This document shows positions 3,871-36,409 of a stretch of DNA of 64,000 nucleotides, piece after piece. The stretch spans positions 62,001 through 126,000 of the IMG/VR virus record IMGVR_UViG_3300049846_000628. One strand, 5' to 3'. Under the pieces are notes generated by a model that was not told where the DNA came from, ran no database searches, and saw only the letters and a list, made by a program, of their open reading frames with translations. Positions within the stretch are counted from its first letter, which is position 1. The number at the start of each line of letters is the position of its first letter. The position numbers and the translations under genes are program-made.

Positions 3871-4032
3871 TTATTCCTCATCCCCTCCAGCACTAGAGGA
3901 AGATCTCTTAGCACAAGCCTTTCCCCCAGGAGCCATAGCATAAGGAATTACCTTATAGCATTTAACCTTTGTTTTTTGTGGTGGATTTCCAAAGTCACCC
4001 ACCTTTTCCATAAACTGCTGGAAGGTTTTCAT
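3871..4032 (-). CDS. 53-aa ORF with a capsid-targeting-sequence-like N-terminus (not in ORF track)
   Basis: Hand translation MKTFQQFMEKVGDFGNPPQKTKVKCYKVIPYAMAPGGKACAKRSSSSAGGDEE*; late-promoter-like CTAAATA 13 nt upstream; fills the gap between hsp20 and the terminator. Confidence 0.75.
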   Translation of the reverse strand: MKTFQQFMEKVGDFGNPPQKTKVKCYKVIPYAMAPGGKACAKRSSSSAGGDEE

Positions 4033-4045
4033 TTGTTTTTTATTT

Positions 4046-4052
4046 TATTTAG
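4046..4052 (-). promoter_or_regulatory. Late promoter variant CTAAATA
   Basis: Overlaps the hsp20 stop codon, upstream of the 53-aa ORF. Confidence 0.55.
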
Positions 4053-4483
4053 AGATAGTCCTTTCTAGCGTGATGTTCTGGAACTACTTTCCCAAGTACG
4101 ATCCGTAGAAGTCCGTCTTCAAATGTGACTTCGCGGACTTCTGTGTCGTCGGATAAAGTCCACGCTCGTTTAAAACTTCTGCTAGCCACTCCCTTGTGGA
4201 TAAACGTCCTATCCTTTTCGGAATCTGTTTTTTGTCCTTCGACAAAAAGCTTTCCATATTCTGTGAAAACATTTACATCTCCTTTCTTAAAACCTGCGAG
4301 TGCAATTTCTAAGTGTGACTCAACATTATTTACCTGAACAAGATTATAAGGTGGGTAATTTGTTGTAGTTTCGTGAAGATTGAATAAGCGATCGAAATAT
4401 TCATCCATTCCAATGCTATTACGTGTGATCCTCTCCATTAGAGATGGAAGATCTGCAGCAGTATACCTTGTGAGGTTAGTCAT
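4049..4483 (-). CDS. hsp20: Small heat-shock protein (Hsp20/alpha-crystallin family)
   Basis: NYPPYN, LEIALAGF, FKRAWTLSD and FEDGLLRI motifs. Start moved to MTNLTRY (4483) because AAGGAG lies at 4497-4492. Confidence 0.95.
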   Translation of the reverse strand: MTNLTRYTAADLPSLMERITRNSIGMDEYFDRLFNLHETTTNYPPYNLVQVNNVESHLEIALAGFKKGDVNVFTEYGKLFVEGQKTDSEKDRTFIHKGVASRSFKRAWTLSDDTEVREVTFEDGLLRIVLGKVVPEHHARKDYL

Positions 4484-4559
4484 TATGGTAGCTCCTTTAA
4501 AAGCGAGTTTGTGTTTTGTGGACCCTTTCGGCATCCATTATTAATTATACAACAAACAT

Positions 4560-4585
4560 AAAAAAAGCGGGTGTTGAAACCCGCT
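4560..4585 (-). terminator. Intrinsic terminator after regA
   Basis: AGCGGGT-6nt-ACCCGCT stem followed by a T-tract on the minus strand; TATAAT (4549-4544) follows and could drive hsp20. Confidence 0.75.
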
Positions 4586-4590
4586 CTTTA

Positions 4591-7895: not shown

Positions 7896-7911
7896 ATCAA
7901 AAAAATAAAAA

Positions 7912-8445: not shown

Positions 8446-8483
8446 TTACTAAACCTCGTAGTATAATACTATTTAGTAAATGA
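8442..8483 (-). promoter_or_regulatory. Start-codon-sequestering hairpin containing late promoter CTAAATA (8476-8470)
   Basis: 12-bp inverted repeat TCATTTACTAAA / TTTAGTAAATGA including the ATG, with an inner TAGTA/TACTA stem. Confidence 0.75.
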
Positions 8484-8488
8484 GTTAT

Positions 8489-10501: not shown

Positions 10502-11605
10502 TCAGGATTGTGCTTCCTGGTCAACAGGCATTTGGAAGTCAGCATCCACTTTATCATACAGTTCAAGGAAGGACTGCTTGGTTTCGTCATCAAATCGGTT
10601 GACGCACACTTGAATTGCCTTTGCCTTGTCTTGGAAGATGCTGTAGGCACGGATAATGTGGGTCAGGCGGCGGGTGCTGATGATTTCCTCAATACCACCA
10701 TCATAGAAGGTCTTACGGATGATGTCTGCCCAGTCCACAAGACGCTTACAGAAGTCACGGTCTTCCACGCCAAGGTCCAGAGCGATGCCTTCCAGGATCT
10801 TCTGTTCAGTAGCAGGGGCAGGATAGGACTGCTCAAAGGTCACGGGGAAACGCTCAAGGAATGCTTCGTTGAGAACATTGGTGCCGATAAAGCGTCCATC
10901 ATCAGAACCCTTACCTTTGGTGTTAGCGGTGGCGACCACATTAAAACCAGCAGCAGGTTTCACGAAGCGACCGATCTTCTTGAGGAACACACCCTTACCT
11001 TCGAGAATGGATTGCAGGCACAGGATCTTATTAGATGCAAGGTCAATTTCATCCAGCAGCAGGATAGCGCCACGCTCAAGTGCTTCCACCACAGGACCGT
11101 TGTGCCAGACAGTTTCACCGTTCACAAGGCGGAAACCACCAATCAGGTCATCCTCGTCAGTCTCAATAGTGATATTCACACGAATCATTTCACGCTTGAG
11201 TTGAGCACACGCTTGCTCCACCGAGAACGTTTTACCGTTACCCGACAGACCCGTGATAAACGCAGGGTAAAAGATACGGGACTGAATAATTTTTTTAATA
11301 TCACCAAAGTTACCAAACTTGACGAAGGTATCATCTTTATCAGGAATGAGGTTTTGTTCAACAGCAGGCAGAGCAGCGGGTGCTTGATATGCCTGCTCCA
11401 TTTTACCAACAACGCTAGGGGTCACTTCCAGGTTCCAACGACCACGAGCAGTCTTATAACCTTCAAGGCGACGAGTCACGGTCTGATAGTTGAGACTACG
11501 AGAAGCACAGAAACCTTTGAGGTCGCCAGAAGTAATTTCAGAACCATAGAGTTCTTTGATGCTTTCAATGAGTTGCTGGTCGTTCACAGAAGACTTGCGA
11601 GACAT
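10502..11605 (-). CDS. cobS: CobS/MoxR-like AAA+ ATPase
   Basis: Walker A GLSGNGKT, DEDDLIGG, Walker B LLLDEID, ATANTKG, NEAFLERF and ISTRRL. Confidence 0.9.
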   Translation of the reverse strand: MSRKSSVNDQQLIESIKELYGSEITSGDLKGFCASRSLNYQTVTRRLEGYKTARGRWNLEVTPSVVGKMEQAYQAPAALPAVEQNLIPDKDDTFVKFGNFGDIKKIIQSRIFYPAFITGLSGNGKTFSVEQACAQLKREMIRVNITIETDEDDLIGGFRLVNGETVWHNGPVVEALERGAILLLDEIDLASNKILCLQSILEGKGVFLKKIGRFVKPAAGFNVVATANTKGKGSDDGRFIGTNVLNEAFLERFPVTFEQSYPAPATEQKILEGIALDLGVEDRDFCKRLVDWADIIRKTFYDGGIEEIISTRRLTHIIRAYSIFQDKAKAIQVCVNRFDDETKQSFLELYDKVDADFQMPVDQEAQS

Positions 11606-11693: not shown

Positions 11694-11858
11694 TTACCTA
11701 GTTTTTTTCTTTGAAAATTTAACCGATACTGGTCTCTCAAATGGAGTGCCCTCTTGAACAATTCCATCACCATCACGATCTCTTGCGTCCTCATTATAAC
11801 CATCCAACGTTTCAAGATCTGGTGTTTTTTCTGTGTACAAGTCTGAGAATCTGCTCAT
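11694..11858 (-). CDS. 54-aa ORF with a DxDxDG motif (not in ORF track)
   Basis: Hand translation MSRFSDLYTEKTPDLETLDGYNEDARDRDGDGIVQEGTPFERPVSVKFSKKKTR*; ATAAATA at 11890-11884 upstream. Confidence 0.7.
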   Translation of the reverse strand: MSRFSDLYTEKTPDLETLDGYNEDARDRDGDGIVQEGTPFERPVSVKFSKKKTR

Positions 11859-11883: not shown

Positions 11884-11890
11884 TATTTAT
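11884..11890 (-). promoter_or_regulatory. Late promoter ATAAATA
   Basis: Overlaps the stop of the vWA gene, upstream of the 54-aa ORF. Confidence 0.55.
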
Positions 11891-14034
11891 CAGGCAACAA
11901 GTTCCACAAACTCACCAAGAATCTTCTTGTTCATCTTTTTAGATTTCAGACTCTTCACAAAAGCAGATTTGATTTGAGACTTGGTAGCATCTTCTGCAAC
12001 TTCAAACTCACTGTTCTGGGCAAGGGCATTAGCAGAGAGACCAAAGTAAGAATGATAACCAGACTTCTTGATGGTAAATGCCTTTTCTTTTTTCCAAGCA
12101 GACATCACTTTTTCATAATCAGGTCCATAAAACCCACAATAGCGGCGAATAAAACTACCAGCATCACGCGATTCAAGAACACGAATACCAATGAAGTTGA
12201 TATCGGTAAACCTATCCCGAAGATTGCGAAGCATAACATCAGTGAACTCGTGATAATCACAATCACAAGAATAGGTCATACCAGTCTTACGGTCACGGAT
12301 GAAAGCATTAGGACCGATATGTGAGGTGCCCATAAAAGCATCTTCCTCCCAGCGACGTTGAATTTCACGGTGATACTTGAGCATCGCACCCTCACCATCA
12401 GTCAGAATCACACACTGAACTTTCTGGAGTTTGTTTTCCTTCTGGAACTTAGGAAGAATCTGGTGAAGAGAAATCAGTGCCTCATTCAGGGGGGTGCCCG
12501 AAAGACTCATACCCATAGGAGGCTGATAGGAAACGTGAGAATGATAACGGAAGGAAGCAGCAAGACGGAAGATATTCTTCATCTGCTCATCCAGAGTCTT
12601 ACTGTTCACTTTACTGGTGAGAAGATTCATCATAGAGAACCATTCGCCAACCTGAACAAGACCATCCTTTTTCTTATAGGCAAGTTCGCGGATATTTGCC
12701 TTACCGTCCTCATCATACTTCACCAGAGGATAATCAGTAGTGAAAGCATAAACCTCAAATGGAATTGCAACTTTTTTACAGAACCAAACAAGGTTGAACA
12801 GTTGCTTGACCGTATCCATCATCACTTCACACATAGAACCAGACCAGTCCAGTACAAACACCAGACCGTGATTCTTACCATCAGAAAGAGTGGTGACTTT
12901 TTTGAAAAGGTCTTCGTTGTATTTGTAGGTATGAAGTTTGGTGCAGTCCAGAACACCAGTGCGAGCAGTTGTAGCACGGGCATAGGAATCTGCTGCCTTG
13001 CGGCACTCAAACTCTTTCACCAGATAGTTGACTTCCTTCTGAGCAGAACGCTTGAATTCTACAAAATCCCTATCAACTCCACCAAATACATCCTCAGATT
13101 TCCATTCACGGTCTACAAGGAAAGAATCCCAAGATTCTTTACACCTATCGTGAATCTCTGCATTGGAGACAATAATTTTATTCAGGTCAAGTTTAGGCAG
13201 TTCCAGATAGACATTCTCATACCCATCATTATTAATAAGTTCCTTGAGTGCTTCCTCAAGATTTTCCATCGTCTTGACTTCAGGTTCCTCACCAACATCA
13301 GGACTCTGAGCAGTAGGTTGCTTCTCTTGCCCAGTTTCACTAGAGGTAGGAGATTCGGAAGTTTCATCCTGAGGTTGGTCATTCTCACCTTCCTGCTGGT
13401 CTGTAAAATCAGAAGCAAGTTGTTGACTCGCACCAGAATCCTGCGATTCCAGATTATCCATCGGAGTCTTGGTTTCTTCCTCTTGCTTGTGCTTGCAATA
13501 CTTATAAAGTGCCTCTGCAGCAATCAGAACATCGGCAAAGGTCTCAGTATCAGCAATCAGATTGATAATCTCAGTCTCTTCGCCACGCTCAATCGGCACA
13601 TCAACATAGTTACCAACCTTGAACCACAGGTTTGCACGGTCGGCAAGATTGTAAGTATCCAGATTATCATCCTTGATTTGGAAGAAATCTTCATCGGCAA
13701 GTTCTTTATATCCGTTATAAAAACTTTTAGGGGAACCTGGATATTTTCTTTTACAAAGTTTTTCTACCCGCACATCCTCACAAATATTTACAAAAGTCGC
13801 TGGGACTTTACATTCTTTAGTCCAATCATAATTTGGGGTCCAAAGGGCGTGGCTAATTTCGTGCAAAACAAGCATAGTGTAAATATTATCACTTGCTTTT
13901 TCCCACATAGGTAAGGTCAATACCCTTGTATGGACATTAAAACAAGCAGTCTCTACCTTCTTGTGCTCAACCACAAGGTCTTCAGTAGCAAGCAGTTTAG
14001 CAAGTTGGGACTTGATTTCGTGGCGGACGGTCAT
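11890..14034 (-). CDS. CobT-like vWA-domain protein with an N-terminal HExxH metallopeptidase-like region
   Basis: HEISH near the N-terminus, an acidic linker, then MIDAS elements DWSGS, SGTP and LTDGE; adjacent to cobS. Start taken at MTVRHEIK (14034). Confidence 0.85.
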   Translation of the reverse strand: MTVRHEIKSQLAKLLATEDLVVEHKKVETACFNVHTRVLTLPMWEKASDNIYTMLVLHEISHALWTPNYDWTKECKVPATFVNICEDVRVEKLCKRKYPGSPKSFYNGYKELADEDFFQIKDDNLDTYNLADRANLWFKVGNYVDVPIERGEETEIINLIADTETFADVLIAAEALYKYCKHKQEEETKTPMDNLESQDSGASQQLASDFTDQQEGENDQPQDETSESPTSSETGQEKQPTAQSPDVGEEPEVKTMENLEEALKELINNDGYENVYLELPKLDLNKIIVSNAEIHDRCKESWDSFLVDREWKSEDVFGGVDRDFVEFKRSAQKEVNYLVKEFECRKAADSYARATTARTGVLDCTKLHTYKYNEDLFKKVTTLSDGKNHGLVFVLDWSGSMCEVMMDTVKQLFNLVWFCKKVAIPFEVYAFTTDYPLVKYDEDGKANIRELAYKKKDGLVQVGEWFSMMNLLTSKVNSKTLDEQMKNIFRLAASFRYHSHVSYQPPMGMSLSGTPLNEALISLHQILPKFQKENKLQKVQCVILTDGEGAMLKYHREIQRRWEEDAFMGTSHIGPNAFIRDRKTGMTYSCDCDYHEFTDVMLRNLRDRFTDINFIGIRVLESRDAGSFIRRYCGFYGPDYEKVMSAWKKEKAFTIKKSGYHSYFGLSANALAQNSEFEVAEDATKSQIKSAFVKSLKSKKMNKKILGEFVELVA

Positions 14035-14062
14035 AGGTCTGATTCGTATAAGACTATTATAC

Positions 14063-14087
14063 AAAAAAAGGAGATCCGAAGACCTCC
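14063..14087 (-). terminator. Intrinsic terminator with a cUUCGg loop, followed by TATAAT (14061-14056)
   Basis: GGAGGTC-TTCG-GATCTCC-TTTTTTT on the minus strand. Confidence 0.85.
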
Positions 14088-14111: not shown

Positions 14112-14678
14112 TCAGACTCCACGCATTTGCATTGCCGAGGTATTAGCTCTATCTAATGCAGCACCAGGATTCTGCTTACCTGGAGTATACTTATGGGCAG
14201 ATCCAGGTTCTCTTTTATTCATCTCACCAACTTTACCCACTAAGTATTTTTGTCTGGCAGTTAAATCTTGCTCAACAATGCTCTTCTTCCACTCTTCACT
14301 CATATTCGCCATAATAGCAAGTGCTGCTTGATTAGTATCAGCGTAACCTTCTGCGACCAGGTGCTCAAGAATAACATCAAAAAAATCAAAGGATTCTTTT
14401 TGATCTTCCTTTTTAGGCATTCTAGCGCCAGTTTTATGTCTTTCTACACCAGCAGAATCTCTATAAGTTTCTCTTTCGGGTCTTGGGGAAACATAACCTA
14501 CACCAGGAACATTTCCAGTTTTTCCTTGCTTTCTAGCTTCGTTTCTTGCTGCTGCTCTTTGTGCTGCTCTTTGACGATTTCTATCGTAAGAAGACATAGC
14601 TTCATCAAGTTGCTCTTGATTTTCATATACAGCATTAAATGCTTCCATCAAACCTGCATATTCTTTTTGAATGTCCAT
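14112..14678 (-). CDS. Hypothetical late protein; paralog of 14710-15585
   Basis: 188 aa; N-terminal LMEAFNAVYE and internal FDFFDVILEHLVAEGY; TATAAATA upstream. Confidence 0.8.
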   Translation of the reverse strand: MDIQKEYAGLMEAFNAVYENQEQLDEAMSSYDRNRQRAAQRAAARNEARKQGKTGNVPGVGYVSPRPERETYRDSAGVERHKTGARMPKKEDQKESFDFFDVILEHLVAEGYADTNQAALAIMANMSEEWKKSIVEQDLTARQKYLVGKVGEMNKREPGSAHKYTPGKQNPGAALDRANTSAMQMRGV

Positions 14679-14698: not shown

Positions 14699-14706
14699 TA
14701 TTTATA
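14699..14706 (-). promoter_or_regulatory. T4-type late promoter TATAAATA
   Basis: Exact consensus, followed by N3-AAAAAGTAT. Confidence 0.75.
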
Positions 14707-14709: not shown

Positions 14710-15585
14710 TCAATATACTTTGTAATTCTTTCCACTCCAACTAAATGTAGATCCCATTCCACCTTTTGCCTTTGCAGCACCATATGCTTTATCAAAGGAT
14801 TGAGCTCTTGTTAATCCCTGATCAGGATTTTTTGGACCTTGCTTTGGTTTATAATCACCTCTCTTTAAAGCACCGGAGAGAGTTGCATCTCCAGTAGGTC
14901 TAGGAGCCATTACTGAAGCAGCAACACCTGCGGGAGTAATGTTCCTTACTGCTGCAGCTGCGCCTAAAGTTTTAGCAGCTGGTTCAGCAACTTTTCTTCC
15001 CTGATCAGCAAATCTTCTTAGTTCGGGAAACTTATCCATATTTGGACCAGTAGCACGAACAGTTGCTCCAGGTCTATATGGATTTGGCTTTGAAGTTGTT
15101 GGTTTTGCAGTTGCCTTTACAGGTGGTTTAGGTGCTTTTACTTGAACTGGTTTGTTTGGGTAAAGCATTTTTTTCAAACCACGAGCAAATACTTCTGTTG
15201 GATGTGGTTTATCAAATCCAAGAAGATTTGCAATCCCTCTACCAATAACTTCTTGTGGATGCATACCTTGCTCCACAACATAAGTCATAATGTACTTAGA
15301 TTCTTCTACTGTACATCCTTCACTAACAAGATATTCAAATACCTCATCATAGATATCAAAATCCTCATCAATTAATTCACCTTCTAGTTCATAATGTGCG
15401 TTTTGTACATTTGCACTCTTAGATGGTGTTAAAGGAACAACTTTTCCCCCACCATATTTTGGATTTTTATCTATTATTTTCTGAAGAGTTGCATCAGGAT
15501 TATCGGTAGGAACACCAATCTTTTGCTCATAAACTTTTTGATATGCTTCCACCAAATCTTGATATTTTTTACCGTACATTTTCAA
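14710..15585 (-). CDS. Hypothetical late protein; paralog of 14112-14678
   Basis: 291 aa; LVEAYQKVYE and DFDIYDEVFEYLVSEG; Lys/Pro/Gly-rich C-terminus; TATAAATA upstream. Confidence 0.8.
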   Translation of the reverse strand: MKMYGKKYQDLVEAYQKVYEQKIGVPTDNPDATLQKIIDKNPKYGGGKVVPLTPSKSANVQNAHYELEGELIDEDFDIYDEVFEYLVSEGCTVEESKYIMTYVVEQGMHPQEVIGRGIANLLGFDKPHPTEVFARGLKKMLYPNKPVQVKAPKPPVKATAKPTTSKPNPYRPGATVRATGPNMDKFPELRRFADQGRKVAEPAAKTLGAAAAVRNITPAGVAASVMAPRPTGDATLSGALKRGDYKPKQGPKNPDQGLTRAQSFDKAYGAAKAKGGMGSTFSWSGKNYKVY

Positions 15586-15595
15586 AAGATACTTT

Positions 15596-15739
15596 TTAGA
15601 TATTTATAAAAAAAACACCCCTTTCGGAGTGCTTTTTCTTGAAGGCTTTGAGTCGTGCCTTTGCTTGTCGAAGTGCTTGCGGTTTCAGTTTCCGTTTCTG
15701 CTCCTTCTTGGAATGGTGCTGCCAGTTTGGGACTTTCAT
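15596..15739 (-). CDS. 47-aa basic peptide (not in ORF track)
   Basis: Hand translation MKVPNWQHHSKKEQKRKLKPQALRQAKARLKAFKKKHSERGVFFINI*; begins 11 nt after the gp46 stop. Confidence 0.65.
   Translation of the reverse strand: MKVPNWQHHSKKEQKRKLKPQALRQAKARLKAFKKKHSERGVFFINI
15601..15608 (-). promoter_or_regulatory. T4-type late promoter TATAAATA
   Basis: Exact consensus, followed by N3-AAAAAGTAT as at 14699. Confidence 0.75.
15608..15633 (-). terminator. Intrinsic terminator with a GAAA loop after the gp47/gp46 unit
   Basis: AGCACTCC-GAAA-GGGGTGTT-TTTTT on the minus strand. Confidence 0.7.
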
Positions 15740-22913: not shown

Positions 22914-24317
22914 TCACATCAGGTTAGCAACCTTAACTCTTCTGTAGTAGTTGTTTGCGTTGGTGGTCAGAGCACCAGCGCCAACATCAAGACCCTGTGC
23001 GAATGGGTTTGCAACCATTCCATAACGGGTCTTAAAGCCGATCTTAGGCTGGAAGGTATTCTCGCCAACGGCACGTACCATCTGCAGAGGTACATATGGG
23101 CAATAGAACAGACCAGCATCATATGGGCTAGAACCCTTATAACCGACAACGTAGAACTGGTTAGCAGATACGTTTGCCGAATATGGGTCAATGTATACGC
23201 GATACTTACCTTGGAGAACACCAGCGAAGGTGTTGCCGGTATCATCAACGTTCAGGTTAGCATTGAGTGCAGGGGTGTAATCGAGAACACCAGCCATTGC
23301 AAGTGCCGAAGCAACGTCAGCAGAGCAAAGGATAGTGTTACCCTTTCCTCTACGAGTTTGCTGAGCGATTGCGTTTGCATCACGCTCGATCTGGAAGATC
23401 AGACCCTTGAACTTCTCAACCGACCAACGACCGTTGGAGTCAACGTCGAGGTCAAAAGTACCAGCGGTAGCGGTGTTAACTTGAGCACCAGGCTTAGCAA
23501 CCTTGTAGATGGTGCGGATAACTTCGCGGTTGATTTCAGCAAGAATCTCAGTGCTGAGGATGTTAGCAAGCTCAGCTTCTGCATTCAGACCGTGAATTGC
23601 CTTCAGGTCTTGTGCGAGTTCTAAGCTGTACTCAGCCTTGAGTGCGCGTGACTTAGCAGTTACGGTGACCTTCTCGATCGAGAAAGCCATCTGGTTGAAC
23701 TGCTCCGATTCGCCAAGTGATTCAGCTTCATCGGTTCTCATTCCCTGACCAACGTTGTACTGGTTAACACCAGGAGCAGCGTTGTTTGCTTGGTTAGAAC
23801 CATCAAGGATTGCTGGGTTGAGTCCCTGTTGGGAGGTAGTACCCATACCAACGTTACCACCGGTCCAACCGTTGGTATTGTTGAATCCGCTGTCCTGACC
23901 AGAGAATGCAGAATCTGCTTCGTTGTAGAAGGCTTCGTTTCCAGCCTGGCTGGTGTAGCGTGAACGCATTGCGAAGATCAGTCCAGTAGGACCGTTCATT
24001 GGCTGAACGCCACAGAGATCGTAAGCGATCAGGTTAGGCATCGAACGACGGATCAGTGAGATCAGTACGGGATCGAAACCTTGCATAGCGCCAGTGCTTG
24101 CAGCACTGAAACCAGTACCAGTACCAGTGCTGGTGCCGGTGCTATTGGTTGGAGATTCGTAAAGGAACTCACGCTCTTCACGAATGGTTCTTTCTTGGTT
24201 TTCGAGCAGGATTGCGGTTACAGCTCTACGATGTGAATCTTTGATTGGATCAAGACCTTCGTAGTCGAGGAGCGGTGCCCACTTCTCCTGCAATTGCTCG
24301 GTATTGAACATTTGCAT
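22914..24317 (-). CDS. gp23: Major capsid protein
   Basis: KWAPLLD, CGVQPMNGPTGLIFAMRS, KSRALKAEYSLELAQDL and FQPKIGFKTRYG. Confidence 0.99.
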   Translation of the reverse strand: MQMFNTEQLQEKWAPLLDYEGLDPIKDSHRRAVTAILLENQERTIREEREFLYESPTNSTGTSTGTGTGFSAASTGAMQGFDPVLISLIRRSMPNLIAYDLCGVQPMNGPTGLIFAMRSRYTSQAGNEAFYNEADSAFSGQDSGFNNTNGWTGGNVGMGTTSQQGLNPAILDGSNQANNAAPGVNQYNVGQGMRTDEAESLGESEQFNQMAFSIEKVTVTAKSRALKAEYSLELAQDLKAIHGLNAEAELANILSTEILAEINREVIRTIYKVAKPGAQVNTATAGTFDLDVDSNGRWSVEKFKGLIFQIERDANAIAQQTRRGKGNTILCSADVASALAMAGVLDYTPALNANLNVDDTGNTFAGVLQGKYRVYIDPYSANVSANQFYVVGYKGSSPYDAGLFYCPYVPLQMVRAVGENTFQPKIGFKTRYGMVANPFAQGLDVGAGALTTNANNYYRRVKVANLM

Positions 24318-24373: not shown

Positions 24374-25534
24374 TCACTTTTTAGAAACTCTTTGGAGAGT
24401 CTGAAGATAGGCACCCATTGTGCCTCCAACTTCCTGAGCATTGCTCAGATCGGTTGACTCAGACAGATTTTCACTAGCGTTTCTTTGAGTACCAGCAGTT
24501 CTAGTTGAGAAATAAGATTCTCTTAGAGTTACCAGTTTCTCACGATAGCTCTCTTCACTATCAAACTCAACATTTTCGGCAAGAGAAGCGAGTTTGTCCT
24601 TCTGAGAAAGTGCGAGACCCTCAGCGACTTCTGCAAAGATTACATCAGCAACCGACTCTGCTAATCTTCTATTCAGAGCAACATTTCTTTGAATTTGCTC
24701 GTTGAGTTTTTCTTCCATTTCATCAAGTTTATCTACCATACTCTCGATAACATCATATCTATCTTCAGGGATTGTTACATAATGATCTTCAAAAAGACTC
24801 TTCATTCCTTGGAGGAATGATTCGGTCATTTCAGTCTTAAGACCGTGCTCAACTGCAAGTGCATTCTCTTGAATCCACTCGTCAGCAACATACTCAAGGT
24901 ATGCATCAACACGATCGGTAAGATTTTCTTTAATTGCTTCGATCTCTTCTACGAGAGCAGCAGCATACGACTCTTCGAGTTGCTCTTTAATTTCACCAAC
25001 TCTAGACTTGATTGCTGCTTCGAAGATAGTGCGTGCTTTCTCTTGGAATTCCTCAGAAAGCTCTTCACCAGCGAGAAGAGCATTAACATCTTCATCGATG
25101 TTGAACTCTTCTTCCATTTTCTTCTTACCTTTTTTCTTACCACCCTCTTCCTCTTCCTCTTCAGCAGCCTCAGCGACTACTTCCTCATCTTCATCAAGTT
25201 CTTCCTCATCGACAAGATCCTCATCCTCTTCAGTCTCTTCCTTAACACCTTGTCCAGGAAGTGAAACTGGAGTTGCTGATGAGTGTGGTGCTTCTGCAGC
25301 AGCTGCTTTAGCATTAACCACGTTTCTTACTTGAGCAAGAGTAGCTCCAGGAGTTTTGAGAGCAGCCGAATCGTCGTCTGGACGATAGTTTTCTGGAGTA
25401 GGACCACCTAAATCTTCCCAACCACCGGTTTGACCTGGAGTAATAGCTCCAGTACCAGAATGCATTGGTTCGGCAGGTGCTGCCCCTTTGGTTACTACGT
25501 TTTCCATTTCTTGTAAATTTCTACCAACGGACAT
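24374..25534 (-). CDS. gp22: Prohead core scaffold protein
   Basis: Glu-rich; FQEKARTIFEAA and YLEYVADEW; between gp21 and gp23. Confidence 0.93.
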   Translation of the reverse strand: MSVGRNLQEMENVVTKGAAPAEPMHSGTGAITPGQTGGWEDLGGPTPENYRPDDDSAALKTPGATLAQVRNVVNAKAAAAEAPHSSATPVSLPGQGVKEETEEDEDLVDEEELDEDEEVVAEAAEEEEEEGGKKKGKKKMEEEFNIDEDVNALLAGEELSEEFQEKARTIFEAAIKSRVGEIKEQLEESYAAALVEEIEAIKENLTDRVDAYLEYVADEWIQENALAVEHGLKTEMTESFLQGMKSLFEDHYVTIPEDRYDVIESMVDKLDEMEEKLNEQIQRNVALNRRLAESVADVIFAEVAEGLALSQKDKLASLAENVEFDSEESYREKLVTLRESYFSTRTAGTQRNASENLSESTDLSNAQEVGGTMGAYLQTLQRVSKK

Positions 25535-25574: not shown

Positions 25575-26225
25575 TTATAGATTTGAAAGAAACTCTTGGA
25601 ACAATTGAATTTTATGTTCCTGAAGTCTTTTTTCATCTACTAGAGTGTTAATTCTACGTTTTGCAGATTCTGCAAGTTTCTCACGAAGGATTCCACCTTC
25701 CCAAACCCACTCTTTTCCTTCCATAATTCCCTGAACAAAAGCGTCAGGAGCAGAAGGATCGGCAACGATATCTGCAGCAGTTGCTAGCATAAAATCTTCG
25801 CCAACAATTTTATGACCTTCATTGGTCATTTTGAGTGAACCAACACCACGAGAAGAAACACCAAGACAAACACCTTCACCAATAAGTGATTTTGCAATCT
25901 TACCCATTGGAGTTTCTAGAAGTTGTGCCTTACCTCTAAAATTTGTTCCATCTTGCTCAAGAGAAACAATTTTATGAGAAACACGGTCAAGGTTTACGGT
26001 TGGACCATCTGGGTGCCCAAGTTCTCCAAGAGCACGACCTTTGCAAACAAAAGTTTCGTTATATCTTTTTACTTCGCGTGAAAGAGTTTCCATTGGATAC
26101 ATTCTTCCATTGCGATTGCAAATATCACCCTGAAGGAATACTCCTTCAATGTACATTTTCCTTTGAGGTCCTTTTCCTTCGGTAACAAATTCTACCTTTT
26201 GAATTTCTTCTGTGATGAGTTTCAT
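25575..26225 (-). CDS. gp21: Prohead core protease
   Basis: NRNGRMY, GELGHP, GVSSRGVGS and DIVADPSAPDA. Confidence 0.97.
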   Translation of the reverse strand: MKLITEEIQKVEFVTEGKGPQRKMYIEGVFLQGDICNRNGRMYPMETLSREVKRYNETFVCKGRALGELGHPDGPTVNLDRVSHKIVSLEQDGTNFRGKAQLLETPMGKIAKSLIGEGVCLGVSSRGVGSLKMTNEGHKIVGEDFMLATAADIVADPSAPDAFVQGIMEGKEWVWEGGILREKLAESAKRRINTLVDEKRLQEHKIQLFQEFLSNL

Positions 26226-26229: not shown

Positions 26230-26760
26230 TTATTCGGAAACTAGTTGAACTACTTCTGTAACACTAACTCCAAGATTAGTATCTGGTGTATATGCAGAAA
26301 CTTTTACGCTTCTAACTAAATCAGCACCAGTTATATTTGGTGAAACAATTGAAGAACTATTGAAATTAATTGTAACTGATGAATCAGTTAACGACACAAT
26401 TGACTTATGTGTAGTATTAATTCCAGCAGTTGGAGCTCCTTCAATAGAAACATAATCAGTGCTTAAAAATGGATTACCTGCATTATTCTCAAAAATGAGA
26501 GTTGTAGTTGTTCCTGTAGTAATACCAGCTATTTTTTGCCTAGCAAGCCTTTCCTTTAAAACTTCAGCGGTGTATGTACCAACATGAAAATCATTTGTTG
26601 TCGCTACTGGATCATTTCCAACGACAACATAACAACCTACTCCAGAAGATGCAATAGAAACTCTAAGATAACCGCTTTTTAATGCAATAGGATTGCTAGT
26701 AGCAGCAACTCCAGGATTTGCAGATATTTTGTTTACATTTTGGATAATTTTTACAGCCAT
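26230..26760 (-). CDS. Hypothetical protein in the head cluster, probably structural
   Basis: 176 aa, beta-rich and Thr/Ser-rich; coupled to neighbours. Confidence 0.7.
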   Translation of the reverse strand: MAVKIIQNVNKISANPGVAATSNPIALKSGYLRVSIASSGVGCYVVVGNDPVATTNDFHVGTYTAEVLKERLARQKIAGITTGTTTTLIFENNAGNPFLSTDYVSIEGAPTAGINTTHKSIVSLTDSSVTINFNSSSIVSPNITGADLVRSVKVSAYTPDTNLGVSVTEVVQLVSE

Positions 26761-26927
26761 TATTCTTCATCTCCGGGGGTTTCAGCATCACCAAACATTA
26801 ATGCTGCAATCTCTGGACGAGCAGAATCTACTCTCTCAGCAGCTTTAGCATATAGTAATTCTTTAATTCTGTCGGAAACGTCCGAAGGAGCTCCGTCAGT
26901 TGCAATCAAATCGATAAGTTCTTCCAT
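26760..26927 (-). CDS. Small acidic prohead core protein (gp67-like by position)
   Basis: Directly after gp20; start taken at MEELIDL; TATAAATA upstream. Confidence 0.6.
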   Translation of the reverse strand: MEELIDLIATDGAPSDVSDRIKELLYAKAAERVDSARPEIAALMFGDAETPGDEE

Positions 26928-26951
26928 AAAATTGGTTTGCATTTATAAGAT

Positions 26952-31490: not shown

Positions 31491-31506
31491 AATTCCTACC
31501 CTTTAA

Positions 31507-33204: not shown

Positions 33205-33210
33205 AATAAT

Positions 33211-34485
33211 TTACCTCTGTTCCAACCAGTTCATAATTGCAAGTGCTGCTTTGTTAGCGTTAGGTGAGGCACATACAAGAGTGTAAATATCACTAATTGT
33301 TCCAATACCACTTCTACCAACTTGTAGTTGTGCTTTATCGTCAATGACTACCTGACTTCCACCACCACCAACAACAAATCCACTTAAAAGAACTCTTCCA
33401 CCAGTGAAAGAAGTTGCAGTGGTATCATATTGAGTAATTGCATCTGAGTTTGCGTGATCAGTAAATGCTGCACCGACTAGAGTTGGATTTTCAATCAATC
33501 TCCAGAATACATTGGTGTTATCATTAGTAGATACTTGTAGTGATCTTGGTAGAACAACGCCAGATAATGAATTTGATTTAAGACGAATACTGAGAACTGG
33601 ATAATAAGTATTTGCAACAGTCATCGTAGTTCCACTAAGAGCATTACCTTGACTGACGAGAGTTCCAAGTTTTTCTGGTTCTCCTTCCTGAATAAGAGAA
33701 TTGGAACCCTGATATAAGTAATGAGTTCCTGCAACACCAGTTACATTTTCAATTTCACAACGAATTGGTAGGAACGGAGTAGAACACCAAACATATGGAT
33801 TGGTATTTGCATTATCAAAAGTATGACTATGAATAGTCTCATTCTTCATCAACCAATTGAACTGAACAATTCCAGCACCATACCATTCATAGTTAATTGA
33901 AATCATTTGTTGTTTTGTTGGATCTGCAACAACTCCTGTATATCCATCACCACCAAACTTTTCACCATTCCAATTATCTCTGGTTACTCTAGTTTCTGTA
34001 GTAATTCCAGATGTGCTACTGCGAATTACATATGAATATGTTCCACCATCGTCCTCAAAGTAAGCACCATTATACTCATCAAATATTCCAAATCTTCTGC
34101 AAATACCTACTTTTGGTGCTTCAAGACGAATTGCAAATGCAAGAGTTGCACCTCTACCAGGAATATATCTCATTACAGTCCTAGTTTGACGAATGACTTT
34201 ACTTCCTGCAGTAGAACCAACTTGCATCACAACATTACTAGATGCTGGATCGTGGGTTGCAGTTCCTACTCCAACTACTCTCTCATCCCATACATCAGTC
34301 TCTTTTCCATACTGGAAAGTGTTGAAGAATACTGTTTGGAATGGAGCAACTTTGAGTCTGTTGTTATTAGAAAACTGAGGTCTCCAGTCCGTCTGGTTTC
34401 CCCAGTGATCTGCAATATTATAAACTTCAAATAAAGTTCTTTCTTGATTTAAATAATCTTGTTCATTCTTATTCCACTGTGCCAT
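33211..34485 (-). CDS. Hypothetical beta-rich protein in the gp16-gp17 interval
   Basis: 424 aa, rich in aromatic residues, Gly and Thr; carries the GVGT/GITT motif seen in virion proteins here. Confidence 0.7.
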   Translation of the reverse strand: MAQWNKNEQDYLNQERTLFEVYNIADHWGNQTDWRPQFSNNNRLKVAPFQTVFFNTFQYGKETDVWDERVVGVGTATHDPASSNVVMQVGSTAGSKVIRQTRTVMRYIPGRGATLAFAIRLEAPKVGICRRFGIFDEYNGAYFEDDGGTYSYVIRSSTSGITTETRVTRDNWNGEKFGGDGYTGVVADPTKQQMISINYEWYGAGIVQFNWLMKNETIHSHTFDNANTNPYVWCSTPFLPIRCEIENVTGVAGTHYLYQGSNSLIQEGEPEKLGTLVSQGNALSGTTMTVANTYYPVLSIRLKSNSLSGVVLPRSLQVSTNDNTNVFWRLIENPTLVGAAFTDHANSDAITQYDTTATSFTGGRVLLSGFVVGGGGSQVVIDDKAQLQVGRSGIGTISDIYTLVCASPNANKAALAIMNWLEQR

Positions 34486-34488
34486 AAA

Positions 34489-34803
34489 TCAATCACTCCA
34501 AGTTAGGCTTTCTGGTCTGTATCTTTGTGCGTTTTTAATTTTGATAGAATCTGATGATAATGGATAAACATTATGAACAATTGCTCCAGGATATTCACCC
34601 TGAAGTTGTTCGGCAAGTGCATTTTTATCAATCATTTTACCTTCAACTTCCAATCGATATAGTTTTCCTTGCCAAACTACATCAGCAAGAAAAGATTCAC
34701 CGACTGGTTGCGATTGTGGTTCAGATCCATTGATATAAAGATTTCCGTTAAAGTCGCCAGCAATGTTGACGCTTTCTGATAGGAATTGTTTGAATGATTT
34801 CAT
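34489..34803 (-). CDS. Hypothetical protein with a capsid-targeting-sequence-like N-terminus
   Basis: Starts MKSFKQFLSE-S; 104 aa. Confidence 0.8.
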   Translation of the reverse strand: MKSFKQFLSESVNIAGDFNGNLYINGSEPQSQPVGESFLADVVWQGKLYRLEVEGKMIDKNALAEQLQGEYPGAIVHNVYPLSSDSIKIKNAQRYRPESLTWSD

Positions 34804-34804
34804 T

Positions 34805-36409
34805 TTAGTTACAGTTCCAACGACGAAGGGCTTTGTTGATTCTGGAATCAGGGTCTCTTGCAGTTTCTGTAGATGTAAGTCTCTTTTTCATTCCAGACAT
34901 ACGTGAGCAAAATGATTTACGTCTTGATGCTCTTTTACCCGTTGGATTTTTTTCAGTCACTGCTGTTTGAAGTTTTGAACCAGGATTCTCGCGGCGATAA
35001 GCATTAACTGCTTTTTGACTCAAACCATCGGTCTTATCTTGACGATTGACCTTCTGCCAATCTTCATTCAAACCCATTTCTGCTCGCCAATTAGAAAATC
35101 CTTCCTTCTTAACGCAATTTGGAACCATTCTTTTTCCTTTCTTTTTCATTCCAATCTGCTCATATCCATCCCAGCAGTCCTCACTTACTTTCATTTCTCC
35201 ACTATCAACATAATCTGCTGCAGAATCTAAATAATCTGCTGCTTTAGTAATTTTGGATTGAACCCACGCCTCAATATTACCCTCACCTTTCATTTTTTTC
35301 TTTAATCTCTTCGCAGCAGCAATAATGGTTGAAATCTCAGAACGAGCCATTGAGTGTTCGTGATCATATGACTCTGGGAAATTTCCAGGATGCACAGTGG
35401 CGATATTATACTTTAGTTGATTTGTAGTTAGTGCAGGAGGCATTGAGAACATATCCCAATACTTTGCTCCATATTTGCACTCATCTCTCGTCTCGTCTTT
35501 TTTGCACTTTGGACAATATCTGATCATTTGAGTCTCCTCTGACTTAGTTCCCCAATTATCAGCACCAACCTTACGACACTTGACCAGTGCTCCAGATGCA
35601 TATGCACTTGGCCAAACGTCATATCTTGATTTTACTTTATTATAGCAGGCATCTTTTTTACCACTACCTTTGCCTGGTTTATCTTTTTGTGCCTCGTTAA
35701 TTTCCATTGCTTCCTTGATTCCTGGTTCTGCCTTTACATAATTAGGATCTTCTTTACCTTTAGCAAAAGTGGAAACCATTGTTGGTTTGGATCCACCCGT
35801 TTTTGCTTGTTGACCTGGATCTTTTTCTCTTTTCCTACGAACTGCTGATCTAATTAAAGATTCACCTTTTTTACCCTTTGCCTTTAGAGATGCTAATCTT
35901 GCACTACTAAAACATTTTGGTGTTTTAGTTTCTCCTGGTTCATTTGCACAAGGAGATCCATCTGCTTGAACCCATCCAGGTTTGCCTTCTTTAGAACGAG
36001 AACCCTTAAACCAATGATGGAGAGTTCCTTCACTTACATCTTTGAATTTTTTATGATGCTTTTTAGCATCCGCTTCCATTTTTTTCAAACGAGTGTAATA
36101 ATCTGGAATTTCATCAAGATGTTGTAACGCAATATCAGTTGCAAGATCTTTATCTTTAGTGTGTTCACGTTCAATGGGAATACCCATCTCAAGTTGTCTT
36201 TTTATGAAAGAAACTTCAAGACGATGCTTCTTTGCAATTTGTTCAACTGTTTTATGAGGTTTGACTTCGTGCATTTCTCTAAATGGAGACTTTGATTTAG
36301 TCTCTTCACCCCCTTGTCTTTTTTTACGAGCAGCACAATGAGCTTTCTGTGAGAATCCACTTGGACTATCACAGTTTATTGATCTTTTATACTTATCAGA
36401 CCAACTCAT
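34805..36409 (-). CDS. Basic multi-module protein (candidate polyprotein)
   Basis: 534 aa; about eight short Lys/Arg-rich modules, most with Cys pairs, separated by Glu-containing linkers. Confidence 0.8.
   Translation of the reverse strand: MSWSDKYKRSINCDSPSGFSQKAHCAARKKRQGGEETKSKSPFREMHEVKPHKTVEQIAKKHRLEVSFIKRQLEMGIPIEREHTKDKDLATDIALQHLDEIPDYYTRLKKMEADAKKHHKKFKDVSEGTLHHWFKGSRSKEGKPGWVQADGSPCANEPGETKTPKCFSSARLASLKAKGKKGESLIRSAVRRKREKDPGQQAKTGGSKPTMVSTFAKGKEDPNYVKAEPGIKEAMEINEAQKDKPGKGSGKKDACYNKVKSRYDVWPSAYASGALVKCRKVGADNWGTKSEETQMIRYCPKCKKDETRDECKYGAKYWDMFSMPPALTTNQLKYNIATVHPGNFPESYDHEHSMARSEISTIIAAAKRLKKKMKGEGNIEAWVQSKITKAADYLDSAADYVDSGEMKVSEDCWDGYEQIGMKKKGKRMVPNCVKKEGFSNWRAEMGLNEDWQKVNRQDKTDGLSQKAVNAYRRENPGSKLQTAVTEKNPTGKRASRRKSFCSRMSGMKKRLTSTETARDPDSRINKALRRWNCN

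What the first reader, a model, noticed from the sequence alone, without database searches (positions are those of the whole stretch)
3871..36409. Candidate system: a dispersed, late-expressed, prohead-protease-processed cargo set
Seen: six non-core ORFs (3871-4032, 11694-11858, 14112-14678, 14710-15585, 34489-34803, 34805-36409) lie behind late-promoter motifs or in late operons, four of them inside the replication region. Two have CTS-like leaders, two share an LxEAYxxVYE-type leader, and several have hydrophobic-x-Glu sites at module boundaries followed by basic segments. Established: T4 gp21 cleaves after (I/L)-x-E. Inference: together they may be a mix-and-match repertoire of head-packaged peptides delivered with the DNA, for DNA condensation, host takeover or anti-defence, larger than the T4 IPI-III set.
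Basis: inference. Interest (0 to 1): 0.7.

Follow-up and report, generated by a model that had tools for sequence, protein, structure and literature searches.

The report
T4-style capsid-targeting leaders in a cyanophage
This freshwater T4-like cyanophage carries a family of late genes whose first ten residues closely match the phage T4 signal that loads proteins into the head and is then cut off, so they are probably injected with the DNA; this would explain why a nucleotidyltransferase keeps turning up in cyanophage particles.

Summary
All six ORFs exist. Five have their own late-promoter-like [A/C]TAAATA motif 20-32 nt upstream, and the sixth is coupled to one of them. Two begin MK[TS]F.QF, as do T4 IPII and IPIII (MKTYQEFIAE). 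Two share an LxEA[YF]xxVYE N-terminus.

Genome-wide, five ORFs carry the strict leader (0.15 expected by chance). These are the two reported ORFs plus a 434-aa cytidylyltransferase/NMNAT-like enzyme, a 137-aa ORF and a 56-aa ORF, all three outside the window. The same DNA pattern picks out only ipI, ipII, ipIII and 61.1 in T4.

Of 100 distinct MKTFQQF ORFs from viral metagenomes, 96 have Glu at position 9 or 10, and they carry at least 39 unrelated cargoes. The phage has gp21 (catalytic motifs kept), gp22, and a gp23 with L-x-E at the T4 cleavage position.

Published virion proteomes of related cyanophages contain orthologues or family members of the enzyme, of the LxEAY family and of the 534-aa modular protein. 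They do not contain the orthologue of the 104-aa ORF.

[LI]-x-E density is not above background, and no cleavage or head location is shown for this phage. I read this as a new member of a known kind (T4 CTS/internal proteins). Interest is moderate to high.

The parts
3871..4032 (-). 53-aa ORF (P0001). Leader MKTFQQFMEK (F4, F7, Glu at 9). Basic (pI 9.3), Cys-containing, with a Ser/Gly/acidic tail. It lies between the DNA polymerase gene and hsp20.
   Evidence: Orthologues in S-SRM01 and DSL-LC02. At least 17 distinct members in the IMG/VR sample. pI.
4046..4052 (-). Late-promoter-like CTAAATA motif, 20 nt upstream of the P0001 start.
   Evidence: CTAAATA: 21 on the coding strand, 5 on the other.
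11694..11858 (-). 54-aa ORF (P0002). Begins MSRFSDLYTE, a weaker CTS-like register (F4, L7, Y8, E10, but no Lys at 2). The mature part has a DxDxDG-type loop and a basic tail.
   Evidence: 17 metagenomic clusters with M1, S2, F4, L7 and E10 invariant while positions 5, 6, 8 and 9 vary. No homologue in isolate phage genomes. Sub-threshold Excalibur hit.
11884..11890 (-). Late-promoter-like ATAAATA (GATAAATA), 32 nt upstream of the P0002 start.
14112..14678 (-). 188-aa ORF (P0003). N-terminus ...KEYAGLME|AFNAVYE. A second L-D-E|AMSSY site sits at a conserved module boundary. It also has the FDFFDVILEHLVAEG module.
   Evidence: Family member S-SCSM1 ORF89 is a virion protein by mass spectrometry (PMC9602691). 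ACG-2014a ORF158 has VLGE|AMSSY at the same boundary.
14699..14705 (-). Late-promoter-like TATAAATA core, 27 nt upstream of the P0003 start.
14710..15585 (-). 291-aa ORF (P0004), or 289 aa if it starts at the ATG at 15579. Tandem paralogue of P0003: ...KKYQDLVE|AYQKVYE plus the FDIYDEVFEYLVSEG module, followed by a Pro/Ala/Lys-rich basic tail (pI 9.4).
   Evidence: No tblastn hit in isolate phages. BLASTP to S-SCSM1 ORF89 gives 1.6e-7.
15601..15607 (-). Late-promoter-like TATAAATA core, 28 nt upstream of the ATG at 15579.
34489..34803 (-). 104-aa ORF (P0005). Leader MKSFKQFLSE|S in the exact T4 register (F4, F7, L8, E10). Residues 1-34 are predicted disordered and residues 36-81 form a small beta-beta-alpha-beta core.
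   Evidence: 2206 homologue clusters. The leader is invariant at K2 (119 of 120), F4 (119 of 120, one Tyr), F7 and E10 in the 120 sequences read. Structure. The S-SCSM1 orthologue ORF30 is not flagged as a virion protein.
34805..36409 (-). 534-aa modular basic protein (P0006) with DUF5661, several small Cys-containing modules and DUF6321. It has no N-terminal leader. L447-N-E449|DW precedes DUF6321.
   Evidence: The family is flagged structural in Sullivan 2010 file S1 (T4-GC119), and S-SCSM1 ORF29 is a virion protein. Leader-plus-DUF6321 or leader-bearing family members exist elsewhere (L128; P-SSM7 PSSM7_194).
36433..36439 (-). Late-promoter-like CTAAATA, 30 nt upstream of P0006. It heads the tightly packed run P0006, P0005, 424-aa virion protein, gp17.
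25575..26225 (-). gp21 prohead protease orthologue, the presumed processing enzyme.
   Evidence: 40% identity to T4 gp21, with the GELxHP and GVSSRG blocks invariant. Synteny with S-SRM01.
24374..25534 (-). gp22 scaffolding core protein orthologue, the presumed docking partner of the leader (as in T4).
   Evidence: Synteny and annotation in S-SRM01. Sequence. The docking role is inferred from T4 (PMC9026906).
22914..24317 (-). gp23 major capsid protein. F-L-Y-E|S aligns with the T4 F-L-T-E|A maturation site.
26760..26942 (-). 60-aa ORF in the position of T4 gene 67, with ..NFMEE.. near its N-terminus and its own TATAAATA motif.

Best explanation
The phage uses the T4 mechanism for loading non-structural proteins into the head.

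Proposed mechanism. A roughly 10-residue N-terminal capsid-targeting sequence docks the protein onto the gp22 scaffolding core during prohead assembly. Its form is M-K-[T/S]-F-x-Q-F-hydrophobic-x-E, or a one-residue-shorter form F-x-E. The gp21 protease then cuts after the Glu. The mature protein stays inside the head with the DNA and is ejected into the host at infection.

Likely cargoes, best supported first:
- The cytidylyltransferase/NMNAT-like enzyme (genome 56315-57619, outside the window).
- The 104-aa ORF at 34489-34803.
- The small basic ORFs at 3871-4032 and, outside the window, genome 46835-47248 and 137627-137797.
- More weakly, the 54-aa ORF at 11694-11858.

The LxEA[YF]xxVY family is a paralogous family of basic, partly low-complexity virion proteins. 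Its members are 14112-14678, 14710-15585 and a 748-aa paralogue outside the window. Its conserved L-x-E|A near the N-terminus is a plausible gp21 site.

The 534-aa protein (34805-36409) belongs to a virion-associated family built from shuffled small modules. It may be cut at L-x-E before DUF6321.

All are driven by late promoters, so they are made together with the head proteins.

Shown here: the motifs, their statistics, their modularity, the conservation of the machinery, and virion presence of orthologues in other phages. Inferred: docking, cleavage, head location and ejection in this phage, and every downstream function.
For: 1. Five strict leaders against 0.15 expected, all on the coding strand. 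The codons differ at synonymous positions (ACC/ACG/AGT/TCA, TTT/TTC, CAA/CAG), so it is the peptide that is conserved.
2. The same pattern with T/A allowed at the second base of codon 4, so that Tyr as well as Phe is admitted there, finds only ipI, ipII, ipIII and 61.1 in T4, with no hits on the other strand or in the reversed control. In T4, residues 4 and 7 determine targeting and residues 8 and 10 determine processing (PMC9026906).
3. In IMG/VR, 114 of 118 MKTFQQF matches start ORFs of 30 aa or more, with no more than 33 open codons upstream. Of 100 distinct ones, 96 have Glu at position 9 or 10, and position 11 is mostly A, V or I. They carry at least 39 cargo clusters.
4. gp21 is 40% identical to T4 gp21 with its conserved blocks kept. 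gp23 keeps L-x-E at the T4 cleavage position.
5. S-SCSM1 ORF91 (NMNAT) begins MKSFLQFLKE|A and was found in virions by mass spectrometry. That paper notes NMNAT-like proteins recur in cyanophage virions without explaining why. The S-SM1 virion contains the cytidylyltransferase T4-GC190.
6. The enzyme begins MKKFSAFLxE|AE in Syn9, P-SSM7, Syn19 and ACG-2014a. 65 of 150 representatives of the family match the leader motif.
7. S-SCSM1 ORF89 (MDSKTFNSLSE|AYAAVY, same family as P0003 and P0004) and ORF29 (P0006 family) are virion proteins. T4-GC119 is flagged structural.
8. Each gene has a late-promoter-like motif.
9. Six of the nine candidates have pI above 9, against 21% of the proteome.
Against: - There are no proteomic, N-terminal or expression-timing data for this phage.
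- Three strict leaders (P0001, P0008, P0009) have Glu at 9 rather than 10, with Phe rather than Leu or Ile at P3. That is outside the published L/I-x-E rule.
- The S-SCSM1 orthologue of P0005 (ORF30) was not among the 45 proteins detected in that virion.
- P0006 has no leader.
- [LI]-x-E density is at background.
- In S-SCSM1 only 2 of 3 good motif-bearing ORFs are virion proteins, too few for statistics.
- The mass-spectrometry studies do not say where in the virion the proteins sit.
- In many short cytidylyltransferase homologues the leader directly abuts the first strand of the enzyme fold. It could therefore be part of that fold in that family.
- The complex prediction of gp21 with the leader gave no answer.
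Confidence: 0.6

Rival explanations
1. The leader is a conserved 5' expression cassette, or a general N-terminal helix, with no targeting role. The late promoter, ribosome-binding site and first codons would be spread by recombination, as the T-even ip loci exchange. The proteins would be ordinary late cytoplasmic proteins.
For: - Lys at position 2 and A-rich early codons are common in highly expressed genes.
- The leaders sit directly behind similar late-promoter motifs.
- T-even ip genes are known to swap through their conserved 5' ends (Repoila 1994, cited in PMC9026906).
- The P0005 orthologue was not detected in S-SCSM1 virions.
Against: - Conservation is at the peptide level, with synonymous codon variation.
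- Glu at position 9 or 10 is kept in 96 of 100 distinct leaders even though it was not part of the search pattern.
- The two leader-bearing proteins that have proteomic data (NMNAT and ORF89) are in virions.
- The positions conserved (4, 7, 8, 10) are the ones shown in T4 to matter for targeting and processing.
Confidence: 0.13
2. The proteins are virion components but not T4-style internal head cargo. The basic modular proteins (P0003, P0004, P0006 and the 586-aa and 748-aa relatives) would be neck, tail, baseplate or DNA-end-associated proteins. The LxEAY motif and the module-boundary L-x-E sites would be structural features of the domains, not cleavage sites.
For: - The mass-spectrometry studies give no location in the virion.
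- P0006 lies among neck, terminase and tail genes.
- In S-SCSM1 the relatives sit beside genes annotated as tail fibre.
- The LxEAY motif always co-occurs with one internal module, as paralogues would.
- DUF6321 and DUF5661 also occur in podoviruses and pelagiphages, which I did not check for a gp21-type protease.
Against: - Standalone DUF6321 and P0006-family proteins carry the strict leader in other phages.
- In 44 P0006-family tails the position before DUF6321 is hydrophobic in all, the next is variable, and the third is Glu in 38, which is the pattern expected of a gp21 site.
- The high basic content resembles the T4 internal proteins.
Confidence: 0.17
3. The small ORFs (P0001, P0002, P0009) are not functional proteins, or are late regulatory peptides unrelated to the virion.
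For: - They are 53-56 aa with no known domain.
- P0002 has no homologue in isolate phage genomes.
Against: - All three have conserved metagenomic homologues with conserved leaders.
- Each has its own late-promoter-like motif.
Confidence: 0.1

Closest known systems
[quoted passage not shown]
   Same: - N-terminal leader M-K-T-[Y/F]-x-[E/Q]-F-hydrophobic-x-E. The T4 sequences were read from NC_000866.
- Late genes.
- The gp21, gp22 and gp23 machinery is present, with an L-x-E site in gp23.
- Cargoes are mostly small and basic, and unrelated to each other.
- One cargo is an enzyme, as Alt is in T4.
- The genes are dispersed, as in T4, where ipI lies apart from ipII and ipIII.
   Different: - The host is a cyanobacterium, and no cargo is homologous to a T4 IP.
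- The repertoire is larger: 5 strict-leader ORFs here and 8 in S-SRM01, against 3 IPs plus 61.1 in T4.
- Most leaders in the metagenomic sample have Glu at position 9, with Phe at P3 (64 of 100 distinct MKTFQQF ORFs, as against 42 with Glu at position 10), as do three of the five strict leaders here.
- There is no experimental proof of packaging or cleavage.
- The universal cargo is a cytidylyltransferase/NMNAT-like enzyme, not an ADP-ribosyltransferase.
Ejection (E) proteins and inner-body proteins of giant phages (phiKZ, 201phi2-1, SPN3US), processed by gp21-like proteases after x-x-Glu
   Same: Many head-internal proteins are cleaved after Glu by a gp21 homologue. They include paralogous families and proteins delivered to the host (PMC9026906).
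   Different: Those phages use S/A-x-E and long propeptides, not the short T4-type leader. The present genome is a conventional T4-like one of 211 kb.
Virion-associated NMNAT/cytidylyltransferase of cyanomyoviruses (T4-GC190; S-SCSM1 ORF91)
   Same: The 434-aa ORF at genome 56315-57619 is its orthologue (PF01467, phrog_395).
   Different: The published reports note its presence in virions but, in the papers I could search, give no loading mechanism. The leader offers one.

Membership tests
T4-type CTS-targeted internal head proteins | N-terminal leader of about 10 residues with an aromatic residue at 4 and a hydrophobic or aromatic residue at 7 (the targeting determinants in T4) | tested here: met
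   P0001, P0005 and the three ORFs outside the window have K2, F4 and F7. P0002 has F4 and L7 but S2-R3. P0003 and P0004 fit only a relaxed, offset version. P0006 does not fit.
T4-type CTS-targeted internal head proteins | Processing determinants: a hydrophobic residue at 8 and Glu at 10, giving L/I-x-E followed by a small residue | tested here: inconclusive
   The exact register is met in P0005 (L8-S-E10|S), the enzyme P0007 (I8-A-E10|A) and P0002 (Y8-T-E10). P0001, P0008 and P0009 have F7-x-E9 instead. P0008 also has L-T-E at residue 16. In the metagenomic sample 64 of 100 leaders have E9 and 42 have E10.
T4-type CTS-targeted internal head proteins | A gp21-type prohead protease and a gp22 scaffolding core encoded by the phage | tested here: met
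   gp21 at 25575-26225 is 40% identical to T4 gp21 with its conserved blocks kept. gp22 is at 24374-25534.
T4-type CTS-targeted internal head proteins | Protease specificity for cleavage after L/I-x-E is retained | tested here: inconclusive
   gp23 aligns F-L-Y-E|S with T4 F-L-T-E|A. This is consistent with retained specificity, but no cleavage was measured.
T4-type CTS-targeted internal head proteins | Late expression together with the head genes | tested here: inconclusive
   [A/C]TAAATA motifs with strong strand bias lie 20-49 nt upstream. There are no time-resolved transcript data. A metatranscriptome holds the region but says nothing about timing.
T4-type CTS-targeted internal head proteins | Physical presence in mature heads with the leader removed | not testable with these tools
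   Indirect evidence only. The enzyme orthologues (S-SCSM1 ORF91 and S-SM1 T4-GC190) and the family members ORF89 and ORF29 are in virion proteomes. ORF30, the P0005 orthologue, is not.
T4-type CTS-targeted internal head proteins | Ejection into the host with the DNA | not testable with these tools
   None.
Cytidylyltransferase-like / NMNAT-like nucleotidyltransferases (PF01467), for the cargo outside the window | Rossmann-fold nucleotidyltransferase with the (H/T)xGH motif | tested here: met
   PF01467 E = 3.4e-5, above its cut-off. phrog_395 E = 5e-102. The sequence contains FGRFNPPTIGH. The substrate is not determined.

The most novel reading that the evidence does not exclude
The T4 capsid-targeting leader may be a general protein-delivery address across aquatic T4-like phages. 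On this reading:
- Every cyanomyovirus injects a leader-tagged nucleotidyltransferase at the moment of infection.
- Freshwater and estuarine lineages (this genome, S-SRM01) have expanded the address onto 5-8 or more cargoes. These include a small protein with a weak T7 Gp2-like fold and modular basic proteins cut like polyproteins at L-x-E.

That would be an injected host-takeover or anti-defence arsenal larger than that of T4. It would also offer a ready-made tag for delivering proteins into cyanobacteria.
Probability: 0.3. Interest if true: 0.8.

Novelty: new member of a known kind. Interest (0 to 1): 0.6.

Why it matters
- It gives a specific, testable reason why NMNAT/cytidylyltransferase-like enzymes and several proteins of unknown function are repeatedly found in cyanophage particles.
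- It extends a mechanism known from coliphage T4 to the most abundant myoviruses of aquatic systems.
- It yields a simple sequence rule (M-K-x-F-x-x-F, then Glu at 9 or 10) for predicting injected proteins in thousands of metagenomic phage genomes. These are candidates for immediate host takeover or anti-defence.
- If the leader works as in T4, it could be used to load chosen proteins into cyanophage heads for delivery into laboratory cyanobacteria.

Tried and rejected
- Complex prediction of gp21 with residues 1-30 of the leader-bearing enzyme gave no answer (score 0.00, controls not run). It is neither for nor against binding.
- BLASTP of P0001 against T4 gp61.1 found no alignment. The resemblance is limited to the leader, size and genomic setting.
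- Fold search with the P0005 model (mean pLDDT 65). The best PDB match is T7 Gp2: Foldseek E = 0.08, VIA Z = 4.7. It is not clearly above unrelated small alpha/beta proteins (phi29 p6 at 4.0, ribosomal proteins at 3.7). I keep it as a lead only.
- The density of [LI]-x-E or [LIVMF]-x-E sites is not enriched as a signal of processing.
- Pfam and PHROGs give no function for P0001-P0005, P0008 or P0009.
- tblastn of P0004 and P0002 against isolate phage genomes found nothing.
- The metatranscriptome lay-on gave flat contig depth with no information on timing. A contig break at 15585-15630 is near the predicted late start of P0004 but proves nothing.
They were dropped and not resent.
- Literature searches for a capsid targeting sequence or internal proteins in cyanophages found no description. 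Subscription papers (the Syn9 and S-PM2 genome and proteome papers) could not be searched.

Full report
**Context**

The window is bases 62001-126000 of a 211,201-bp T4-like cyanomyovirus genome. All genes in the region are on the - strand. The nearest isolate is the freshwater Synechococcus phage S-SRM01 (Kyanoviridae), at about 80% nucleotide identity and with the same gene order.

The region runs from the replication module to the head and neck genes:
- Replication module: gp43 at 722-3223, hsp20, regA, clamp loader, a UvsX-like gene at 10502-11605, gp46 and gp47, gp55, uvsW, uvsY.
- Head and neck genes: gp3; gp23 at 22914-24317; gp22 at 24374-25534; gp21 at 25575-26225; two small core-region ORFs; gp20, gp19, gp18 and gp17; a 424-aa virion protein; then the two reported ORFs; gp16, gp15 and the neck proteins.

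An identical copy of window 11-16 kb is present in a freshwater metatranscriptome.

**Checking the observation**

The six ORFs translate as stated.

The late-promoter claim holds. Cyanomyovirus late promoters are reported as NATAAATA (PMC2984593).
- Strand bias: in this genome ATAAATA occurs 68 times on the coding strand and 6 times on the other. CTAAATA occurs 21 and 5 times. GTAAATA and TTAAATA are unbiased.
- Position: five of the six ORFs have such a motif whose 5' end lies 20-32 nt before the start codon.
- The sixth ORF: 34489-34803 begins 2 nt after the stop of 34805-36409, in a tightly packed run that continues into the 424-aa virion protein and gp17.
- Replication module: among the 30 ORF starts I listed, the only other one with a motif this close is uvsW. 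One further motif lies 102 nt upstream of the 110-aa ORF at 3440-3772.

**The CTS-like leader**

T4 IPII and IPIII begin MKTYQEFIAE and IPI begins MKTFKEFTS...ITE, read directly from NC_000866. ORFs 3871-4032 and 34489-34803 begin MKTFQQFMEK and MKSFKQFLSES.

Scanning every candidate start in the genome for MK[ST][FYW].[EQDK][FYW] gives five ORFs against 0.15 expected, all on the coding strand.
- A 434-aa cytidylyltransferase-like protein (genome 56315-57619) that begins MKSFFQFIAE|A. Its residues 7-11 are identical to the T4 leader.
- A 137-aa ORF (genome 46835-47248) that begins MKTFQQFCED.
- A 56-aa ORF (genome 137627-137797) that begins MKTFQQFMEQ.

The equivalent DNA pattern gives these counts:

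| Genome | Coding strand | Other strand | Reversed control |
|---|---|---|---|
| This genome | 5 | 0 | 0 |
| S-SRM01 | 8 | 0 | 0 |
| S-SCSM1 | 2 | 0 | 0 |

With Tyr as well as Phe allowed at residue 4, the pattern finds exactly four ORFs in T4: ipI, ipII, ipIII and the 54-aa gene 61.1. The leader codons differ at synonymous sites between paralogues, so selection acts on the peptide.

**Is the leader a modular signal?**

Of these, 114 open ORFs of 30 aa or more, and none has more than 33 open codons upstream, so they are true N-termini.

Among the 100 distinct sequences:
- Glu is at position 9 in 64 and at position 10 in 42. Ninety-six have one or the other.
- Position 11 is mostly Ala, Val or Ile.
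- The parts after residue 12 fall into at least 39 unrelated clusters.

Glu was not part of the search pattern, so its near-invariance is independent evidence for a functional Glu. This matches T4, where gp21 cuts after L/I-x-E and leader residues 8 and 10 govern processing (PMC9026906). The cargoes in the sample include homologues of P0001, P0005, P0008 and P0009, a standalone DUF6321 domain, and an RlpA-like domain.

**The machinery**

gp21 is 40% identical to T4 gp21, with the GELxHP and GVSSRG blocks invariant. I take these to contain the catalytic His and Ser from my own knowledge of the family.

gp23 aligns F-L-Y-E|S (S-SRM01 has F-L-S-E|A) with T4 F-L-T-E|A. From my own knowledge, that is the T4 gp23 maturation site. 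So the primary substrate keeps L-x-E at the same place.

**Experimental evidence from relatives**

The S-SCSM1 paper found 45 proteins in virions by mass spectrometry (PMC9602691). These include an NMNAT (ORF91). The paper remarks that NMNAT-like or cytidylyltransferase-like proteins recur in cyanophage virion proteomes, and it offers no mechanism.

- ORF91 begins MKSFLQFLKE|A.
- The S-SM1 virion proteome contains the cyanophage-core cytidylyltransferase T4-GC190 (PMC3037559).
- The orthologues in Syn9, P-SSM7, Syn19 and ACG-2014a all begin MKKFSAFLxE|AE.
- Among 150 representatives of the enzyme family (clusters at 50% identity), 65 begin with the leader motif. Many of the rest have it offset by a few residues.

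The enzyme is therefore the most general leader-bearing cargo, and it is the one with direct virion evidence.

**The LxEA[YF]xxVY pair**

ORFs 14112-14678 and 14710-15585 are tandem paralogues sharing this N-terminal motif and an FDxxDxxxExLVxEG module. A third paralogue of 748 aa lies outside the window at genome 44555-46801. It begins ...IRDLYEAYNSVY and has the same module.

S-SRM01 gp231 (..IRLMYEAVYN..) and S-SCSM1 ORF89 (MDSKTFNSLSE|AYAAVY) belong to the same family. ORF89 is a virion protein by mass spectrometry.

P0003, P0004 and ORF89 fit a relaxed, offset version of the leader, K-x-[FY]-x-x-L-x-E|A. The 748-aa paralogue and gp231 do not fit it cleanly. I therefore treat the motif as a family signature with a plausible L-x-E|A cleavage site, not as a proven second address.

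In other cyanophages the homologues of P0003 lie immediately downstream of the cytidylyltransferase gene. In S-SCSM1 that gene is surrounded by a cluster of virion proteins (ORF89-93, 95, 97). In the present genome two copies have moved into the replication module, each with its own late promoter.

**The 534-aa protein**

This protein has DUF5661, DUF6321 and several small Cys-containing modules. Its family is T4-GC119, flagged structural in Sullivan 2010, and S-SCSM1 ORF29 is a virion protein. Alignment with the S-SRM01 and S-SCSM1 members shows modules gained, lost and moved.

It has no leader. Other members of the family do: P-SSM7 PSSM7_194 begins MKTYSQFIEE, and an IMG/VR ORF is leader plus DUF6321.

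In 44 distinct family tails, the three residues before the Asp-Trp that opens DUF6321 are hydrophobic (44 of 44), variable, and Glu (38 of 44). That is the conservation pattern expected of a gp21 site, but it could equally be part of the domain.

A second conserved boundary is L-D-E|AMSSY in P0003 and V-L-G-E|AMSSY inside ACG-2014a ORF158.

The overall density of such sites is at background.

**The 54-aa ORF**

P0002 has no relative in isolate phages but has 17 metagenomic clusters. M1, S2, F4, L7 and E10 are invariant in these while positions 5, 6, 8 and 9 vary (MSRFSDLYTE, MSRFSNLFQE). This is the T4 register without Lys-2, so P0002 is a weaker candidate.

**Cargo properties**

Six of the nine candidates have pI above 9, against 21% of the proteome. 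P0005 has a disordered N-terminal third and a small beta-beta-alpha-beta core. The best, but weak, structural match of that core is the RNA-polymerase inhibitor Gp2 of T7. This is a lead only.

**Assessment**

The simplest account is that this phage, like T4, addresses late-made proteins to the prohead core through an N-terminal leader that gp21 removes. The repertoire is larger than in T4, is dispersed through the genome, and is built on shuffled cargo modules.

Its list of members needs correcting, and the decisive steps (head location, cleavage, ejection) remain inferred.

The main objections are:
- The Glu-9 register with Phe at P3.
- The non-detection of the P0005 orthologue in S-SCSM1 virions.
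- The lack of any location data within the virion.

I found no description of this leader in cyanophages in the searchable literature, but subscription papers on Syn9 and S-PM2 could not be searched. I rate it a new member of a known kind, with moderately high interest.

Noticed in passing
T4 NC_000866 18966-19130 (locus L027:967-1131, - strand): T4 gene 61.1 (54 aa, hypothetical) begins MKTFKEFIKE, a CTS-like leader. It sits next to the primase gene in the replication cluster. It is the only T4 ORF besides ipI, ipII and ipIII to match the leader pattern. Its size and setting resemble window ORF 3871-4032, but BLASTP finds no alignment between the two.
   Followed up: partly
genome 56315-57619 (L002:12315-13619, - strand; outside the window): A 434-aa cytidylyltransferase/NMNAT-like protein has a near-perfect T4 leader (MKSFFQFIAE|A) and a linker of about 100 residues before the enzyme domain. 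Across 150 family representatives, 65 start with the leader motif. These include proteins of 500-1100 aa in which the leader directly precedes the FGRFNPPTxGH strand.
   Followed up: yes
genome 44555-46801 (L002:555-2801, - strand; outside the window): A 748-aa Pro/Ala/Gly-rich basic protein has the same LYEAYNSVY N-terminus and FDLVLEYL module as window ORFs 14112-14678 and 14710-15585. It lies directly downstream of the leader-bearing 137-aa ORF.
   Followed up: partly
window 34489-34803: The predicted core of the 104-aa protein (residues 36-81) has its best PDB match in T7 Gp2 and the related YkzG, both RNA-polymerase-binding proteins. The scores are weak (Foldseek E = 0.08, Z = 4.7) and close to those of unrelated small folds.
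   Followed up: partly
L001:1841-1999 (S-SRM01 gp246, NC_070963.1 157627-157785): The deposited annotation starts this orthologue of window ORF 3871-4032 at an internal Met (MEKVGDF...). The leader MKTFQQF lies 21 nt upstream in frame, so the annotated protein lacks its leader.
   Followed up: yes
IMG/VR loci L038 and L062: These ORFs have the MKTFQQF leader fused to what looks like an RlpA-like double-psi beta-barrel domain (..GPGLYGNKTASGQVL..IDRGPY..). That would be a possible cell-wall-active cargo. The domain was recognised by eye only.
   Followed up: no
window 26230-26942: Two ORFs lie between gp20 and gp21, in the place of T4 genes 67 and 68. One is a 60-aa acidic protein with ..NFMEE.. 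near its N-terminus and its own TATAAATA motif. The other is a 176-aa DUF7243 protein. The equivalent S-SCSM1 ORFs 38 and 39 are virion proteins.
   Followed up: partly
window 15585-15630: In a freshwater metatranscriptome that holds this region at 100% identity, one contig ends exactly at 15585. This is just downstream of the TATAAATA motif of ORF 14710-15585. The next contig starts at 15630 with about five-fold higher word depth. This could reflect a transcript boundary, or it could be an assembly break.
   Followed up: no
window 11890-14064: A 724-aa protein (phrog_459, labelled 'peptidase', with a weak link to cobalamin-chelatase-like families, and called 'midasin' in S-SCSM1) sits between the 54-aa and 188-aa late ORFs. 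I found no late-promoter motif in the 150 nt upstream of it.
   Followed up: no
Syn9, P-SSM7, Syn19 and ACG-2014a records (loci L236-L243): Oceanic cyanomyoviruses have only one or two ORFs matching M-K-x-[FY]-x-x-F: the cytidylyltransferase, plus the T4-GC119 protein in P-SSM7. The freshwater or estuarine genomes (this one and S-SRM01) have 5 and 8 strict-leader ORFs. The repertoire therefore seems to have expanded in that lineage.
   Followed up: partly
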